DNA of 63,507 nucleotides, filler included, from Neoconidiobolus thromboides FSU 785 (GCA_025603075.1; 5 parts of 5 records of this genome joined end to end with filler, not necessarily neighbours in it), one strand, 5' to 3'; numbered from the whole stretch's first letter, positions 18,774 through 25,926 are shown. A program made the numbers and translations. The notes: a model not told the origin generated them from the sequence alone.

Positions 18774-20585
18774 CTAACGATTTAAGAACTTTGAATTAGG
18801 GGAAGAATCGGACATATTAAAGTCCTTAGGAATTTGATAGGAGATAAGATTAGGTACTTTAGTATATAAATAATCTCTATACAAACCACCTAATTTCATA
18901 GTAATAAAGGCTTTAAAATCAGTAGTTGGACTTTCTAACCAAAGTTTTCGAGTTAAACAATTTTCTTTAGGTAATAATTGATCTAACTCATTACGAACAA
19001 TTTCCCAACCTAATCCATTATAATGTAAATTTAAACTTCGAATTACTCGATGTAAATGCATCATAAACATAGTATGATAAGCTACATGATGCATATCTTC
19101 ACTATTTTTTGCAATTTGACAAGCTTCTGAATTCCATACATTTACTTGTAATCCAGTCACTTCCTTTAATTGAGTTTGATCTACTTTAATACCACCAAAA
19201 TCACGTACAGCAAAGCCAGTAATTTGATAATTATTATTATTATCTAATTTTAATCGACATAATACATTTTGTAAATGAGCTTCATAAGTTAAACCATATT
19301 TATAAACAGGAGTAGCAAAGGCTTTTAAATATTTTTGACAATAATTAGTAAAAAACTCAATACATTTAGCTTCTGTATTTAAATTCAATACTTTTTTCAT
19401 TACAGATATACCATCGGAATCAACTTCAGTTAATGCTGCTGTTACAATTAATTTTTCACCTTTTTGTTCACATTTTTGTTCAATTTCCTCTCTAATTAAA
19501 CAAGATAAATGTTTAGCAATATCGGAATCTTCATGTTTAGAAACAATAGAACCTACTTCATCCATTACCATTAAATTTTCAAAATCATCATTAATACGTT
19601 CATAAATAGGTCGAAAGTTGGGACCAACATGAGTTGTCCAGGGAGTAATTGTACGTAAAGCACTAGTTACTTTAATACCAACTGCTAATTTAAAACTATA
19701 ATTTGGTATCGAATCTAATACTACAGTTCTTAAGGCGGCCTGTGCTTTACTTTCTAATTTTTTACTTAATTGTTGGACAAAAGGAAATTTTTCTAAGATA
19801 TTGGGCATTTGTAATTCATGAATAAATATCAAAGCTTCCGTTTCTCTATTAATTTCATGTTTTAATTCTTCATATAAAGATTCAATAACTTGCTCATATT
19901 TTCCATTAATAGTGACTTGATCACGTGGTACTTTACATACAATGATTGTTGGATTTAATAAATTATTTTTTAATTCAATTGGCTGTAATGGAGGTAGAGC
20001 ATACCTTGACTTGTTCATTGGGTGAGTTGGATGACCTTCAACGATAGATTGTTCCCAATCAATTGCTTTAGAATGTTGAACATTTAATAAAGATTGTCTA
20101 TTTAAATAAGCATATTGTTGATGATCTACACTACATAATAATTCTTTACTTACTTTATTGACAATATTCATATCAAATTGATTCCATTTAGATATTAAAT
20201 TTAATATGAAATCTAAATCATTAATTTCAACAATATTTTCTTCCTTATTTTCATTAAAATAGTATAATGGAAATTGAATTTCTTGAGGATCTAATAGCCC
20301 AATTGAATAAATCTTATCTTGATTATTATTTCTAGTTTCATTAATTAATGGCATCTCTTTTAATCCAATAATAAACCCTTCTTCATATAACTTATCATGT
20401 TTTTGGTAAATTATACCATAATATTTATTATTATTAGATAGTTGATATTTACTCATAATAGAAGAAGAGACTAATTGAGTTTCTACCATACTTTCATTAA
20501 CAATACAAGATATCAATCTAGAAAACATAGCTTGTTTAGCTTGGGAATAAGAAGTATCCGTTGAATTTGAAGTTTTACTACTCAT
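18774..20585 (-). CDS. IucA/IucC-family NRPS-independent siderophore (NIS) synthetase, paralog 1 (rhizoferrin-synthetase-like)
   Basis: 603-aa intronless ORF with NIS motifs WEQSIVEGHPTHP, FKLAVGIKVTSALRT, YEAHLQN, AVRDFGG, FKAFITMKL. Confidence 0.9.
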   Translation of the reverse strand: MSSKTSNSTDTSYSQAKQAMFSRLISCIVNESMVETQLVSSSIMSKYQLSNNNKYYGIIYQKHDKLYEEGFIIGLKEMPLINETRNNNQDKIYSIGLLDPQEIQFPLYYFNENKEENIVEINDLDFILNLISKWNQFDMNIVNKVSKELLCSVDHQQYAYLNRQSLLNVQHSKAIDWEQSIVEGHPTHPMNKSRYALPPLQPIELKNNLLNPTIIVCKVPRDQVTINGKYEQVIESLYEELKHEINRETEALIFIHELQMPNILEKFPFVQQLSKKLESKAQAALRTVVLDSIPNYSFKLAVGIKVTSALRTITPWTTHVGPNFRPIYERINDDFENLMVMDEVGSIVSKHEDSDIAKHLSCLIREEIEQKCEQKGEKLIVTAALTEVDSDGISVMKKVLNLNTEAKCIEFFTNYCQKYLKAFATPVYKYGLTYEAHLQNVLCRLKLDNNNNYQITGFAVRDFGGIKVDQTQLKEVTGLQVNVWNSEACQIAKNSEDMHHVAYHTMFMMHLHRVIRSLNLHYNGLGWEIVRNELDQLLPKENCLTRKLWLESPTTDFKAFITMKLGGLYRDYLYTKVPNLISYQIPKDFNMSDSSPNSKFLNR

Positions 20586-21185
20586 TTTCTTAACACGATA
20601 TATATAAAATCTAATTTAAAATAATTTATTTTGTTTCAACTTGTTAAAGAATCGATTATATTTAGTTGACTTTAAATACTTTTTGTTTGACTAAGCAATT
20701 TAGAAAGATCACAGAATAAATTTTGATTGTTTCTTATCATCCAAATCAGATAAAACCCATACGATAATGTGTATTTTTAGTTTATCAGATAGAAGGTATT
20801 ATGACTTTTATAGTATAGAATATTATTTTATTCTAGATTGAACTAGATGTTATAGATAGCCTAATTAGAACATGTTAAAGATTAAATTTGTTGACTTAAT
20901 CCTTTATAATTAGATAATTGAAAATTCAATAAACTATTACAAAGATCTGATAAAATTAAAGTTAAATTTGATTGGTTGATTAATTTTAATCGACATTTAA
21001 TCAATATCTAACTGTTAATATGAAAAGTGTACATTAAGTATAGCTTATTCTTTAGTCTAGTTCTACTAGTCATAATAAACGCAAGGTTTTAAAATAAACT
21101 TGTAATCTTATTAATCTACTATATAAATAAATTTAGTTTATTATTTCTTTATCTGATAAAAACTATCATTAGCTTTTGTAATTAT

Positions 21186-21228
21186 AATAAGTAAAATAAG
21201 TAAAATAAGTAAAATAAGTAAAATAAGT
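21186..21228. repeat. 9-bp tandem repeat (AATAAGTAA)n in the divergent intergenic region
   Basis: aataagtaa repeated more than four times. Confidence 0.85.
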
Positions 21229-23439: not shown

Positions 23440-23523
23440 TTTTTGAATTTCATTTATTTTTTAAGCATTATTAAAAAGTGAAAAATTGTTAGTAAAATTC
23501 TTTAAAAAAGGCATTTTCATATG
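23440..23523 (-). mobile_element. MITE-like element, partial/degenerate
   Basis: aagtgaaaaattgttagtaaaattcttt...catatg core; limits approximate. Confidence 0.55.
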
Positions 23524-24180
23524 CTTATTTTGATTAATAAAATATCAATAAAATACTTTTATTTCAATTAAGAAACAAAAAAAATCAATATCTAGTTCAA
23601 CATATTAACTTCAATTATAAATAATTGATAATAATTAGTAACTTTTGTTAATTAAACTCTTATCCCTAATAATTAGAACTCATAAACCCTGTTTCTAATA
23701 AATTTGAGTTCATAAACTCTATTGTAAACTATAACAAATAGCCTAAACTAATTTTAGTTAAAGTATTTCTAAATTACTTTGAATAATAATTGATAAGTAA
23801 TCATGATAAACTAACAACATAACCCCAACCATCTAGATAAATGAATAATCTTTTAACCTTACACTAAAACTCATCTTAATCTTATAAGCCTCATTTTTAT
23901 TATGTACAATCATAATCACAGTGTTATCAGATATCCTATTTTATTCTTTCTATAAAAAAAAGCAATCAGATAAAATTTTGATATTTTTAACAATCATCAA
24001 GAACAAATTATAATCTAGGATTAGCCAATAATATAAAACTCAAACAATTAATATTTATCTGATGAAAATATCAATTTCTCTATTAAAAGTGAAGCATATA
24101 AAAACTTAATTTCAGAAACAATGAGAATGCAAAATTCGAGTTAATCTCTTTTCATTTTATTCTTTGAAAAATCCACTAAA

Positions 24181-25926
24181 ATGACCCTGGATGATGTTGA
24201 TTTAAAACAAAAAGCTTCTGAAGCTATGATCAAACGTTTAGTTACTTGTATGGTTAATGAAGATATGGTAGCTACCAAATTACTTACTGACAATCATTCG
24301 TTTAATTTACCTACCTTCGATTATAATCATTTAAGTTTTATAACTCAAAAAGATTCTATTAATCCTCAAGAAGGTTTCTTATTAAAATTACAGCATTTAC
24401 CTTTACTTCGTGAAATTGATAGTGGATTTTCTATAGGTTTACTTGATCCCATGGATATTCAATTCCCATTCTATTATTATTCCAATGATAAATTAACTGA
24501 ACTCGATGATGTAACCTTTATAATGGAAAAAGTAAGTATATGGAATAATTTTGATGCTGTTATGGTGAAAAAAGTAACCTTAGAATTGTTGAGTTGTGTA
24601 GAACATCAATATCATGCCTATTTAAATAGAAAAGAAATATTAAATGTAGATACAGCTAAAGCAATTGAATGGGAACAATCTATTGTTGAAGGTCATCCAA
24701 CTCATCCAATGAATAAAGCAAGACATGCCATTGCACCTATCCCATACATTAAGCCAGAAGAAGATATGTTAAGTCCTAAAATGATTGTTTGTAAAGTACC
24801 ACGTGAGGAAGTAACTATCTTAGGTAAATATGAATCTGTATTAAAACCTTTATATGAAGAATTAGCTGGAGAAGTAAATATTGAAACTGAAGCTTTGATT
24901 ATGGTCCATGAATTACAAGTTTACAATTTAAAAGAGAAATTTCCTAATGTCAAAGTATTAAGTAAACAAATCTCAAGTTTGTCTCAAGCTACACTAAGAA
25001 CTATGAAAATTGATGGATTTCCAAACTTTAATTTTAAATTACCATTAGGTATTAAAGTGACTTCAGCATTAAGAACAGTGTCCCCTTGGACTACTTTCTT
25101 TGGTCCTAATTTTGGTCGAATTGCACAAAAAATTAATTTAGATAAAGAGAATTTAATTATTGTTGATGAAGTAGGCTCAATTGTTTCTAATCATCCATCA
25201 ATTGATATGGCTAAACATTTATCCTGTTTGATTCGAGAAGAAGTGGAAGTTCAATGTTTAAAAAGAGATGAAAAGGTAATTATTGCAGCTGCATTAACTG
25301 AAATTGATTTTGATAATGTATCTGTATTAACAAAAGTGTTTAATTTAAATACTTATGAAAAAAGAGTATCTTTTTTTAAAACATATTGTGAAAAATATTT
25401 AACTGCTTTCCTTACCCCAGTAATTAAATTTGGTATTGCATGGGAATCTCATTTACAAAATACATTATGTCGATTTAAAAAAGTAAATGAAGAATATCAA
25501 TTAGTTGGTTTTGCTATTCGTGATTTTGGTGGTATTAAGGTTCATCAAGATACTTTATTCGATGCCATTGGTGAAAAAGTACTAGTATTTAATGAAGATG
25601 CTTCCCAATTAGCTCATAATAAACAAGATATGTACCATGTAGCCTATCATACTATGTTTATGATGCATCTTCATAGAATTCTTCGCTGTTTAAATTTACA
25701 TTATAATGGAATAGGTTGGGAAATCGTTAGAAAAGAGCTAGACAGACAATTACCTAAAGACCATGAGTTGAGGCACCATTGGTTGGAAAATAAAGAAGCA
25801 GATTTCAAAGCGTTTATTTCCATGAAATTAGATGGTTTATTTAGGGATTATCTTTATACTAAAGTACCTAATTTAATTTCTTATCAAATACCTAAAAAGT
25901 TCGAAAGTAAAGTAGTTGATTATTAA
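24181..25926 (+). CDS. IucA/IucC-family NIS synthetase, paralog 2
   Basis: 581-aa intronless ORF; WEQSIVEGHPTHP, FKLPLGIKVTSALRT, WESHLQN, AIRDFGG; colinear with paralog 1 (very roughly 55-60% identity by eye in the core). Confidence 0.9.
   Translation: MTLDDVDLKQKASEAMIKRLVTCMVNEDMVATKLLTDNHSFNLPTFDYNHLSFITQKDSINPQEGFLLKLQHLPLLREIDSGFSIGLLDPMDIQFPFYYYSNDKLTELDDVTFIMEKVSIWNNFDAVMVKKVTLELLSCVEHQYHAYLNRKEILNVDTAKAIEWEQSIVEGHPTHPMNKARHAIAPIPYIKPEEDMLSPKMIVCKVPREEVTILGKYESVLKPLYEELAGEVNIETEALIMVHELQVYNLKEKFPNVKVLSKQISSLSQATLRTMKIDGFPNFNFKLPLGIKVTSALRTVSPWTTFFGPNFGRIAQKINLDKENLIIVDEVGSIVSNHPSIDMAKHLSCLIREEVEVQCLKRDEKVIIAAALTEIDFDNVSVLTKVFNLNTYEKRVSFFKTYCEKYLTAFLTPVIKFGIAWESHLQNTLCRFKKVNEEYQLVGFAIRDFGGIKVHQDTLFDAIGEKVLVFNEDASQLAHNKQDMYHVAYHTMFMMHLHRILRCLNLHYNGIGWEIVRKELDRQLPKDHELRHHWLENKEADFKAFISMKLDGLFRDYLYTKVPNLISYQIPKKFESKVVDY

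What the first reader, a model, noticed from the sequence alone, without database searches (positions are those of the whole stretch)
18774..25926. Compact fungal siderophore cluster: two paralogous NIS synthetases bracketing a FetB/UPF0014 permease
Seen: NIS1 (minus) diverges from a FetB-like gene followed by NIS2 (both plus) within 7.2 kb, with no contig join inside. Established: early-diverging fungi (Mucorales, Entomophthorales) make the polycarboxylate rhizoferrin (citrate-putrescine-citrate), in Rhizopus via a single NIS (Rfs). Two-NIS pathways are known from bacteria; the staphyloferrin A locus has sfaD divergent from sfaABC, a similar topology. E. coli FetB is linked to iron export. 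Inference: a dual-NIS fungal cluster with a UPF0014 transporter instead of an MFS exporter. I know of no description of this arrangement. It could split the two citrylation steps or make a non-rhizoferrin product.
Basis: partly seen in the sequence, partly recalled or inferred. Interest (0 to 1): 0.85.

Follow-up and report, generated by a model that had tools for sequence, protein, structure and literature searches.

The report
Iron-regulated two-synthetase fungal siderophore locus
An AT-rich early-diverging fungus, probably a relative of the insect-pathogenic Entomophthorales, carries two expressed sister copies of a siderophore synthetase on either side of a FetB-like membrane permease, surrounded by iron-repressor binding motifs; it is a new arrangement of a known kind of iron-scavenging locus, and the permease's role is unproven.

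Summary
NIS1 (18774-20585, minus) and NIS2 (24181-25926, plus) are intact, intronless IucA_IucC+FhuF synthetases, 57% identical. They flank a three-exon UPF0014/FetB-family gene (22034-23213, plus). RNA contigs confirm its two introns and show that all three genes are transcribed.

New evidence:
- All 10 copies in the contig of ATCWGATAA, the consensus site of fungal iron-responsive GATA repressors, lie in this locus's non-coding DNA (1.4 expected). The same motif sits upstream of NIS genes in other fungi.
- NIS1 and NIS2 are sister paralogs inside an Entomophthora/Massospora clade, so the duplication is lineage-specific. It is not an SfaB/SfaD-like ancient pair.
- The order UPF0014 then NIS recurs in Entomophthora muscae. 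It is absent from six loci of other named fungi and from 21 metagenomic and 5 genome-collection NIS loci.
- Unlinked UPF0014 genes lack the motif, and no ABC ATPase partner is encoded here.
- Adjacent NIS pairs occur elsewhere, for example head-to-head in Hysterangium.

Verdict: this is an iron-repressed, rhizoferrin-type siderophore locus with two retained synthetases. The permease is a conserved neighbour that may be iron-related, not a shown exporter. It is a new variant of a known kind, of moderate interest.

The parts
18774..20585 (-). NIS1: intronless NRPS-independent siderophore synthetase, 603 aa (IucA_IucC + FhuF-like C-terminal domain)
   Evidence: ORF. Pfam. An unspliced RNA contig 18804-20732 covers it. 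It keeps all 57 invariant columns of alignment A1 and 69 of 76 columns that are at least 90% conserved in 155 fungal NIS. SNPs against related strains are 18 synonymous to 5 non-synonymous.
18687..18695 (+). ATCAGATAA motif 79 bp beyond the NIS1 stop codon
20745..21159 (.). Five ATCWGATAA sites (20745, 20782, 20945, and an overlapping palindromic pair at 21149/21151), 160-566 bp upstream of the NIS1 ATG and just beyond the 5' end of the NIS1 RNA contig (20732)
   Evidence: Six sites in the 1448-bp intergenic region against 0.09 expected from shuffles. The motif is the SreA/Fep1/Urbs1 consensus (PMC2610380).
21801..21809 (+). ATCTGATAA site 225 bp upstream of the UPF0014 ATG and about 80-170 bp upstream of the 5' ends of its RNA contigs
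22034..22277 (+). UPF0014/FetB-like permease, exon 1
   Evidence: Pfam PF03649 profile positions 3-65. Splice joint supported in 4 RNA runs.
22278..22435 (+). Intron 1 (158 nt, GT..AG), holding a (TTATTCTATA)n tandem repeat
22436..22503 (+). UPF0014 exon 2
   Evidence: RNA joints. Gapless alignment of the spliced product to homologs.
22504..22562 (+). Intron 2 (59 nt, GT..AG)
22563..23213 (+). UPF0014 exon 3, including the stop codon
   Evidence: Pfam PF03649 positions 126-236, E 1.4e-41; TIGR00245 FetB E 2.8e-22. SNPs for the whole gene are 23 synonymous to 1 non-synonymous.
23924..24063 (.). Three ATCWGATAA sites (23924, 23965, 24055), 118-249 bp upstream of the NIS2 ATG
   Evidence: Three sites in 967 bp against 0.06 expected.
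24181..25926 (+). NIS2: intronless NRPS-independent siderophore synthetase, 581 aa
   Evidence: ORF. Pfam. Unspliced RNA contig 23674-25891. It keeps 72 of the 76 highly conserved columns. The best and only NCBIfam hit is FslA, rhizoferrin biosynthesis, below cut-off.

Best explanation
This is an iron-repressed biosynthetic locus for a polycarboxylate (rhizoferrin-type, citrate-amine) siderophore in an AT-rich fungus allied to the Entomophthorales.

Origin (inferred from synteny and the tree): the ancestral arrangement was UPF0014 followed by one NIS gene, as in Entomophthora muscae. In the window's lineage the NIS gene was duplicated in inverted orientation to the other side of UPF0014. NIS1 has five repressor sites of its own within about 570 bp of its start.

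State of the genes (shown): both copies are intact, transcribed and under purifying selection, although for NIS2 this rests on only six SNPs. Both keep the family's conserved motifs.

Regulation (inferred from motifs): when iron is plentiful, a SreA/Fep1-type GATA repressor binds the clustered ATCWGATAA sites and shuts off NIS1 and NIS2. It may also shut off UPF0014 through the site at 21801. Under iron starvation the genes are de-repressed.

Chemistry (inferred from the family): each NIS adenylates a prochiral carboxyl of citrate and condenses it with an amine. I judge the long retention of two copies to reflect a division of labour, either by step or by amine substrate, or a heteromeric enzyme, rather than pure redundancy.

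The permease: it is a true FetB-family ABC permease and an ortholog of the general early-fungal UPF0014. I rate it about 40% likely to work in iron or siderophore handling. I rate it about 15-20% likely to be the siderophore exporter itself. Otherwise it is a conserved bystander.
For: Domains and paralogy.

Transcription: all three genes are transcribed as separate RNAs, with a near-silent NIS1-UPF0014 spacer and spliced UPF0014 contigs.

Iron motif in the window: ATCWGATAA occurs 10 times against 1.43 +/- 1.22 expected (maximum 5 in 100 shuffles). All 10 lie in 18687-24063 and none in the other roughly 20 kb.

Meaning of the motif: it is the documented binding consensus for iron GATA repressors of Aspergillus, Ustilago and S. 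pombe siderophore genes (PMC2610380). It was also noted in the Mucor rfs promoter (PMC9226013).

Iron motif in other fungi: it lies within about 700 bp upstream of NIS genes in Dispira, E. muscae, Massospora and Syncephalis. Five copies lie in the Hysterangium NIS-NIS divergent promoter. That is 14 of 18 hits in about 5% of 129 kb.

Tree: NIS1 and NIS2 are sisters (SH-aLRT 100), nested (99) with E. muscae and Massospora. The fungal NIS tree broadly follows the species tree.

Conservation: both copies keep all invariant family columns and 69 or 72 of 76 highly conserved columns. This is no worse than the single-copy relatives, which deviate at 7 and 10.

Selection: SNPs are 18:5 (NIS1), 23:1 (UPF0014) and 3:3 (NIS2), synonymous to non-synonymous.

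Synteny: UPF0014 then NIS, in the same order and strand, in E. muscae. UPF0014 is closest to the E. muscae copy, 56% and gapless.

Chemistry background: Rfs alone makes rhizoferrin in Mucorales, and the fungal NIS studied phylogenetically (Physalacriaceae) are type A' (PMC9226013, PMC10700112).
Against: No iron-dependent expression data could be obtained, so regulation rests on motifs alone. The three NIS2 motifs lie inside the long 5' part of one RNA contig (23674-25891), so their position relative to the start site is unclear. The product is unknown. Rhizoferrin has been reported for Basidiobolus, not for this lineage.

NIS1 and NIS2 both replace a Ser that is conserved in 99% of fungal NIS (A284 and T271). 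NIS1 also has D469 in place of a 93%-conserved His. Altered or reduced activity of one copy is therefore not excluded.

For the permease: there is no linkage in Basidiobolus, Dispira, Rhizophagus, Dimargaris, Syncephalis or Gigaspora, nor in the 21 metagenome and 5 genome-collection NIS loci. The motif is absent upstream of unlinked UPF0014 genes and of the E. muscae UPF0014. No Walker-A-containing partner is in the contig.
Confidence: 0.7

Rival explanations
1. One reading: a dedicated three-gene cluster. The two NIS enzymes each carry out one of the two citrylation steps (staphyloferrin-A-like logic), and the UPF0014 permease, with an ATPase encoded elsewhere, exports the siderophore in place of an MFS pump.
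For: Tight 7.2-kb arrangement. UPF0014-NIS adjacency is kept in E. muscae despite 38-56% protein identity and a transposon-inflated genome. One repressor site lies about 80-170 bp upstream of the UPF0014 transcript start. The FetB family is annotated as iron export. Both NIS copies have been retained for a long time.
Against: NIS1 and NIS2 are young sister paralogs, not two old specialised subfamilies. Single Rfs-type enzymes do both steps on symmetric putrescine (PMC7857480 abstract). Linkage is absent outside the Entomophthorales. UPF0014 elsewhere has no iron motif. There is no ATPase partner here. The distributions of UPF0014 and NIS among fungi do not match.
Confidence: 0.15
2. The permease is a bystander and the synthetases are redundant. 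UPF0014 is a housekeeping membrane gene that happens to lie next to the siderophore synthetase. The NIS duplication merely raises dosage, and both copies make the same rhizoferrin.
For: UPF0014 is widespread and unlinked to NIS in chytrids, Mucoromycota and other Zoopagomycota. It has higher RNA depth than the NIS genes in run X4, consistent with constitutive expression. Five of six sites in the shared spacer cluster near NIS1. Many fungi carry 2-3 NIS paralogs.
Against: Adjacency is retained across a deep split, the neighbour belongs to an iron-linked family, and one motif lies close to its start. Copies that are 57% identical and both under constraint are hard to explain by dosage alone.
Confidence: 0.3
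3. Two products: NIS1 and NIS2 have diverged in amine specificity and make two different polycarboxylate siderophores, for example a rhizoferrin and an ornithine-, cadaverine- or diaminobutene-type analogue.
For: 43% sequence divergence with unequal branch lengths (0.35 against 0.54). The two copies deviate differently at conserved positions (NIS1 A284, A424, T425, D469; NIS2 T271). Separate promoters carry different numbers of repressor sites. Independent NIS pairs elsewhere are also divergent; the Hysterangium pair is 46% identical.
Against: No tailoring or precursor genes (decarboxylase, racemase) are in the contig. There are no chemical data.
Confidence: 0.25

Closest known systems
Rfs, the rhizoferrin synthetase of Rhizopus delemar and Mucor lusitanicus (fungal type A' NIS synthetase)
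   Same: Same two-domain architecture (IucA_IucC + FhuF-like). Same monophyletic fungal family, 32-35% identical to Mucorales orthologs. Intron-poor. ATCWGATAA is present in the promoter, as reported for Mucor rfs.
   Different: Rfs loci are described as single-gene clusters (PMC8070225). Here two 57%-identical copies sit 3.6 kb apart around a UPF0014 gene. The product has not been determined.
Staphyloferrin A locus sfaABCD of Staphylococcus aureus (two type A' NIS enzymes, SfaB and SfaD, with sfaD divergent from sfaABC)
   Same: Two NIS genes in divergent orientation with a membrane-protein gene between them, and an iron-repressed promoter region. The topology of the sfa locus is taken from my own knowledge.
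   Different: SfaB and SfaD are distinct lineages with fixed step specificity on asymmetric D-ornithine. The sfa locus also encodes an MFS exporter and a racemase. Here the two enzymes are recent sister paralogs. There is no racemase, decarboxylase or MFS gene, and the membrane protein is an ABC-type FetB permease.
FetB (YbbM) of the E. coli FetAB iron exporter, and plant ALS3/STAR2 (UPF0014 family permeases)
   Same: PF03649/TIGR00245 domain over the whole length. 41-42% identity to cyanobacterial proteins annotated FetB. Multiple hydrophobic segments.
   Different: No adjacent FetA/STAR1-type ATPase gene. It has a roughly 50-aa C-terminal extension. The eukaryotic fungal function is uncharacterised. 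Its substrate is unknown.
Head-to-head NIS pair of Hysterangium stoloniferum (Basidiomycota), and the two separate NIS clusters of Armillaria/Physalacriaceae (PMC10700112)
   Same: More than one type A'-like NIS per genome. In Hysterangium the two genes share a 640-bp divergent promoter with five ATCWGATAA sites.
   Different: These are independent duplications, and no UPF0014 gene is involved. The Armillaria clusters are unlinked and include ABC/MRP-type transporters instead.

Membership tests
NIS synthetase (IucA/IucC family) | N-terminal IucA_IucC domain followed by a FhuF-like C-terminal domain | tested here: met
   Pfam PF04183 and PF06276 are above gathering score in both NIS1 and NIS2.
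NIS synthetase (IucA/IucC family) | Conserved family motifs (EGHxTHP, SALRT, E-x-H-x-QN, RDFGG, YHT) | tested here: met
   All 57 invariant columns of A1 and all 55 of the 12-sequence alignment are kept. 69 and 72 of the 76 columns that are at least 90% conserved are kept. Assigning these motifs to ATP or citrate binding rests on my memory of NIS structures such as AcsD and AsbB. Only a weak AsbB match was obtained here.
Type A' NIS synthetase, rhizoferrin-type (Rfs/FslA/LbtA/SfaB/SfaD group) | Falls in the clade of characterised type A' enzymes | tested here: inconclusive
   It lies inside the fungal NIS clade that includes the Mucorales proteins. The only NCBIfam hit is FslA, far below cut-off. 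Bacterial type A, B and C references were not included in a tree here. The type A' assignment of fungal NIS is taken from PMC10700112.
Type A' NIS synthetase, rhizoferrin-type | Catalyses ATP-dependent condensation of citrate with a diamine | not testable with these tools
   Needs an enzyme assay or LC-MS.
Iron-regulated fungal siderophore genes (SreA/Fep1/Urbs1 regulon) | ATCWGATAA-type GATA sites in the promoters | tested here: met
   10 sites against 1.43 expected, all within the locus. The motif also lies upstream of NIS genes in five other fungi.
Iron-regulated fungal siderophore genes (SreA/Fep1/Urbs1 regulon) | Transcript induced by iron starvation and repressed by iron | not testable with these tools
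   The RNA runs are coded and their growth conditions are unknown. Only presence of transcripts was shown.
FetB/UPF0014 ABC permease | PF03649/TIGR00245 domain spanning a polytopic membrane protein | tested here: met
   Exons 1 and 3 hit profile positions 3-65 and 126-236. The spliced 320-aa product aligns gaplessly to fungal UPF0014 and at 41-42% to bacterial FetB, and has several hydrophobic segments.
FetB/UPF0014 ABC permease | Adjacent cognate ABC ATPase (FetA/STAR1) | tested here: not met
   No Walker A motif (G..G.GK[ST]) in any of the six frames of the 26.9-kb contig. A partner could be encoded elsewhere, as in plants.
Siderophore biosynthetic gene cluster that includes its transporter | Linkage of synthetase and transporter conserved among relatives | tested here: inconclusive
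   Present in E. muscae. Not seen within 10 kb in Massospora, which has a very inflated genome. Absent in Basidiobolus, Dispira, Rhizophagus, Dimargaris, Syncephalis, Gigaspora and Hysterangium, and in the 21 metagenome and 5 genome-collection NIS loci.
Staphyloferrin-A-like two-NIS pathway | Two anciently diverged NIS enzymes with separate steps, plus a precursor enzyme (racemase or decarboxylase) and an MFS exporter | tested here: not met
   NIS1 and NIS2 are sister paralogs. No PLP enzyme or MFS gene was found in the contig.

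The most novel reading that the evidence does not exclude
In Entomophthoromycotina a FetB/UPF0014-type ABC permease has been recruited as the membrane component of a siderophore system. It would export the polycarboxylate or handle its iron. The siderophore would be made by a two-enzyme NIS pathway in which the paralogs NIS1 and NIS2 have split steps or substrates. 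This would be the first functional assignment for fungal UPF0014 and the first two-NIS siderophore pathway in a eukaryote.
Probability: 0.15. Interest if true: 0.7.

Novelty: new variant of a known kind. Interest (0 to 1): 0.45.

Why it matters
Siderophore biosynthesis in early-diverging fungi is known almost only from the single-gene Rfs system of Mucorales, where it contributes to virulence. This locus adds four things.

1. It suggests that the ATCWGATAA iron-repressor link to siderophore genes, established in Dikarya, extends to Zoopagomycota NIS genes.
2. It is an example of two long-retained NIS paralogs at one locus. This makes it a tractable case for asking how a one-enzyme, two-step pathway diversifies.
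3. It gives a testable lead for the function of the uncharacterised fungal UPF0014/FetB family.
4. No exporter for fungal polycarboxylate siderophores turned up in what I read. If the organism is an insect-pathogenic (and occasionally human-pathogenic) Conidiobolus-like fungus, the locus is also a candidate iron-acquisition factor during infection.

Tried and rejected
- Synteny searches were limited by the caps. After E. muscae, the other UPF0014 contexts looked up showed no NIS. These were Rhizophagus, Dimargaris, an unknown eukaryote (L008-L011) and a JGI metagenome organism (L035-L037).
- The look-up of the fern (Adiantum) NIS context returned no DNA.
- The Massospora locus holds only 10 kb upstream of the NIS, so linkage there is undecided.
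- The metagenome scan gave 21 NIS loci and the genome-collection scan gave 5, all labelled Mycoavidus MAGs. None had UPF0014 nearby.
- CCAAT sites (possible HapX/CBC sites) are not enriched, and the short HGATAR/WGATAA forms are only weakly enriched. The signal is specific to the extended motif.
- I tried to map the published Rfs mutant residues (R354, H484, L544, recalled from memory) onto R. delemar P0281. The numbering did not match that gene model, so I dropped this.
- The sequence search of the PDB gave only a weak AsbB match, so no residue-level structural inference was made.
- I considered and rejected a pseudogene or inactive copy, given the conservation and SNP spectrum.
- I rejected an assembly artefact or contig join, because unspliced RNA contigs and DNA runs cover the locus.
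- I rejected bacterial contamination, because of the GT-AG introns, the 27% GC content and the fungal phylogeny.

Full report
**What is there**

The piece (1-26935) is a single contig of about 27% GC. NIS1 is 18774-20585 on the minus strand (603 aa). NIS2 is 24181-25926 on the plus strand (581 aa). Both carry Pfam IucA_IucC followed by the FhuF-like C-terminal domain, above the gathering thresholds. Their only NCBIfam match is FslA, the rhizoferrin synthetase of Francisella, far below its equivalog cut-off. They are 57% identical over 575 residues.

Between them, on the plus strand, two ORF fragments hit Pfam UPF0014 (profile 3-65 and 126-236 of 242) and TIGR00245 FetB.

**Gene model and expression**

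Public runs hold this stretch at near identity. Four of them are RNA-type assemblies. Their contigs, laid on the window, show two GT..AG joints in all four runs. These define introns 22278-22435 and 22504-22562. The UPF0014 coding sequence is therefore 22034-22277 + 22436-22503 + 22563-23213, which gives 320 aa. My first hand-made model was off by one base at intron 1 and used the wrong acceptor at intron 2.

The spliced product aligns without a gap to the Entomophthora muscae UPF0014 (56% over 272 aa). It is 41-42% identical to cyanobacterial proteins annotated as the FetB iron-export permease. It has several hydrophobic segments.

NIS1 is covered by one unspliced RNA contig (18804-20732) and NIS2 by another (23674-25891). 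The NIS1-UPF0014 spacer is almost silent. All three genes are therefore transcribed, as separate RNAs. Word depths in run X4 were about 68 for NIS1, 654 for UPF0014 and 262 for NIS2. The tool warns that these are poor measures of expression, and the growth conditions are unknown.

**Are both synthetases functional?**

Both keep every invariant column of a 10-sequence and a 12-sequence fungal NIS alignment. These include EGHPTHP, SALRT, E-x-H-L-Q-N, RDFGG and YHT. Of 76 columns that are at least 90% conserved in 155 other fungal NIS proteins, NIS1 deviates at 7 and NIS2 at 4. The single-copy E. muscae and Massospora enzymes deviate at 7 and 10.

Differences between the window and related strains in the RNA runs are mostly synonymous: 18:5 in NIS1, 23:1 in UPF0014 and 3:3 in NIS2. 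Neither copy looks like a decaying duplicate.

Two oddities are worth noting. Both copies replace a Ser that is conserved in 99% of fungal NIS (A284 in NIS1, T271 in NIS2). NIS1 also has Asp at a 93%-conserved His.

**Origin of the pair and identity of the organism**

The closest NIS proteins outside the window all come from early-diverging fungi: Basidiobolus 45%, Dispira 39%, Massospora 38% and Rhizophagus 36%.

In a maximum-likelihood tree of 42 fungal NIS proteins, NIS1 and NIS2 are sisters (SH-aLRT 100). They lie inside a clade (99) with E. muscae, Massospora and a fern-annotated sequence. The tree otherwise broadly follows fungal taxonomy. UPF0014 is also closest to the E. muscae protein.

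The organism is therefore most likely a member or ally of the Entomophthoromycotina. The AT-richness would fit a Conidiobolus-like fungus, but names are masked and I could not confirm this.

The duplication happened after the split from the Entomophthoraceae. It is nonetheless old: the path length between the copies is 0.89 substitutions per site. This argues against the staphyloferrin model of two anciently specialised enzymes.

**Iron regulation, the main new result**

The nine-base motif ATCWGATAA is the extended consensus bound by iron-responsive GATA repressors. In vivo sites in U. maydis sid1, S. pombe str1 and fio1-fip1 comply with it, and it is over-represented in the A. fumigatus SreA regulon (PMC2610380). 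It was also noted in the Mucor lusitanicus rfs promoter (PMC9226013).

The motif occurs 10 times in the window against 1.43 +/- 1.22 expected, with at most 5 in 100 dinucleotide-preserving shuffles. All 10 lie in non-coding DNA of this locus:
- Five lie 160-566 bp upstream of the NIS1 ATG.
- One lies 225 bp upstream of the UPF0014 ATG.
- Three lie 118-249 bp upstream of the NIS2 ATG.
- One lies just 3' of NIS1.

None lies in the remaining roughly 20 kb. Shuffles of the two intergenic segments give 0.09 and 0.06 expected sites against 6 and 3 observed.

The same motif sits just upstream of NIS genes in other fungi:
- Dispira: 2 sites, the only ones in 12 kb.
- E. muscae: 2 sites, the only ones in 13 kb.
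- Massospora and Syncephalis.
- Hysterangium: 5 sites, all in the 640-bp divergent NIS-NIS promoter.

It also sits upstream of an FTR1 iron permease gene in an unidentified eukaryote. I therefore infer that NIS1 and NIS2 belong to a GATA-repressor iron regulon, as in Dikarya. This is inference from cis elements. No iron-dependent expression data were available.

One wrinkle remains. The three NIS2 sites fall inside the 5' part of one RNA contig that begins at 23674.

**Is the permease part of the system?**

For:
- In E. muscae the UPF0014 ortholog is followed on the same strand by the NIS gene, 8.3 kb downstream, in a 1-Gb transposon-rich genome. The order and orientation match UPF0014 then NIS2 here.
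- One repressor site lies about 80-170 bp upstream of the UPF0014 transcript ends.
- The family is linked to iron: FetB by annotation, and plant ALS3/STAR1 iron phenotypes from my own knowledge.

Against:
- No linkage within 10 kb in Basidiobolus, Dispira, Rhizophagus, Dimargaris, Syncephalis or Gigaspora.
- None in the 21 metagenomic NIS loci or the 5 genome-collection loci.
- None in two further UPF0014 loci.
- Massospora is undecided, because only 10 kb of a hugely inflated genome could be seen.
- UPF0014 genes that are not next to an NIS, and the E. muscae UPF0014 itself, have no ATCWGATAA upstream.
- The contig encodes no Walker-A protein, so there is no FetA-type partner here.
- UPF0014 is common in chytrids, which do not appear in the NIS hit lists. 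NIS is common in Basidiomycota, which do not appear in the UPF0014 list (top-120 lists only).

I rate a role in iron or siderophore handling at about 40%. I rate the specific exporter role at 15-20%.

**Comparison with what is known**

Siderophore clusters in Mucoromycotina are described as a single IucA_IucC+FhuF gene (PMC8070225). Physalacriaceae have two unlinked NIS clusters, both type A', with ABC/MRP-type transporters (PMC10700112). No paper in the library combines UPF0014 with siderophore.

Several fungi carry two or three NIS paralogs. Adjacent pairs exist too. Hysterangium stoloniferum has two NIS genes head-to-head, 46% identical. Metagenome locus L018 has two in tandem.

The dual-NIS feature is therefore not unique, although I found no description of it. 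The UPF0014 gene between the two copies is specific to this lineage.

**Verdict**

The locus is best read as an iron-repressed, rhizoferrin-type NIS siderophore locus in an entomophthoralean-type fungus. It arose by an inverted duplication of the synthetase around an ancestral UPF0014-NIS pair, and both synthetases have been retained. The permease's involvement is a reasonable but unproven lead. This is a new variant of a known kind, with interest 0.45.

Noticed in passing
window 7822-8292, 9920-10438, 11748-12503, 13255-13749, 16592-16978 (all minus); 1902-2597 and 5692-6309 (plus): A tandem family of Ser/Thr-rich proteins. The five minus-strand members share an N-terminal signal-like sequence (MRFNTLILPLFFTLI...) and a hydrophobic C-terminus (...YLVSFFTTI..YLVN), so they look like GPI-anchored, mucin-like wall proteins. 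The two members and one plus-strand gene scanned had no Pfam family, and there are no iron-repressor motifs nearby.
   Followed up: partly
window 18123-18194 (minus): tRNA-Asp (GTC) about 580 bp beyond the 3' end of NIS1, found by both Rfam and ARAGORN. It marks the left edge of the locus.
   Followed up: yes
window 26837-26935 (minus): C-terminal 33 residues of a small heat-shock protein (Pfam HSP20, E 4.8e-05), cut off by the contig end. RNA word depth is extremely high in runs X4 and X8 (about 36,000 and 10,000).
   Followed up: yes
window 26237-26272 and 26462-26500: An inverted repeat (...AACAAAATCCTTAAACAAAAATACATCCCC / GGGGATGTATTTTTGTGTTTAAGAATTTTACTAACAA...) flanks about 190 bp. RNA depth over 26346-26543 is very high, and many contigs break at 26457-26463 and 26551. 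It looks like a dispersed MITE-like repeat.
   Followed up: no
window 23674-24180: In run X4 the NIS2 RNA contig starts about 500 nt upstream of the ATG, so the three GATA sites lie within a transcribed leader. This could be an alternative upstream start or read-through from UPF0014.
   Followed up: no
window 21198-21456: A short, low-depth RNA contig lies in the middle of the NIS1-UPF0014 spacer. In three runs the contigs diverge upstream of 21225. It may be a repeat fragment or a small non-coding transcript next to the palindromic GATA pair at 21149-21159.
   Followed up: no
L001 5715-7082 (minus) and 10001-11554 (plus), Basidiobolus meristosporus: The NIS gene lies divergent from a PLP-dependent Orn/DAP/Arg decarboxylase gene. 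This recalls the bacterial FslA/FslC pairing in rhizoferrin synthesis. There is no ATCWGATAA in this locus.
   Followed up: no
L013 7150-9362 (minus) and 10001-12633 (plus), Hysterangium stoloniferum; L018 3239-4857 and 6711-8115 (metagenome): Other adjacent NIS pairs. The Hysterangium pair is head-to-head, 46% identical, with five ATCWGATAA sites in the shared 640-bp promoter. An NRPS-like reductase gene runs off the locus's left end (1-1807, about 5 kb from the NIS pair). The second pair is a tandem pair in an unidentified fungus.
   Followed up: partly
P0007 (Adiantum nelumboides), P0271 (Adiantum capillus-veneris, on a 150-Mb record), P0290 and P0303 (Adineta rotifers): Fungal-type NIS synthetases are annotated in ferns and bdelloid rotifers. 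The A. nelumboides protein nests in the entomophthoralean clade. This could be horizontal transfer or contamination.
   Followed up: no
L038-L042 (records titled Mycoavidus cysteinexigens MAGs): Fungal-family NIS genes, 32-33% identical to NIS2, sit on scaffolds of up to 2.6 Mb assigned to an endobacterium of Mortierella. By matching contig lengths they probably belong to the long-branch 'unknown' clade in the tree. This could be transfer between host and endosymbiont, or mis-binning.
   Followed up: no
L008 about 9611-10531 and 18833-19730; L009 likewise: In an unidentified eukaryote (44% GC), UPF0014 lies about 8.5 kb from an FTR1 iron permease gene whose upstream region carries ATCWGATAA. 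This is a second, weak association of UPF0014 with iron genes.
   Followed up: no
window 20071 joined to 24500 on opposite strands, in run X7: One RNA contig joins NIS1 to NIS2 on opposite strands. This is most likely an assembler chimera caused by the similarity of the paralogs, not a real transcript.
   Followed up: no
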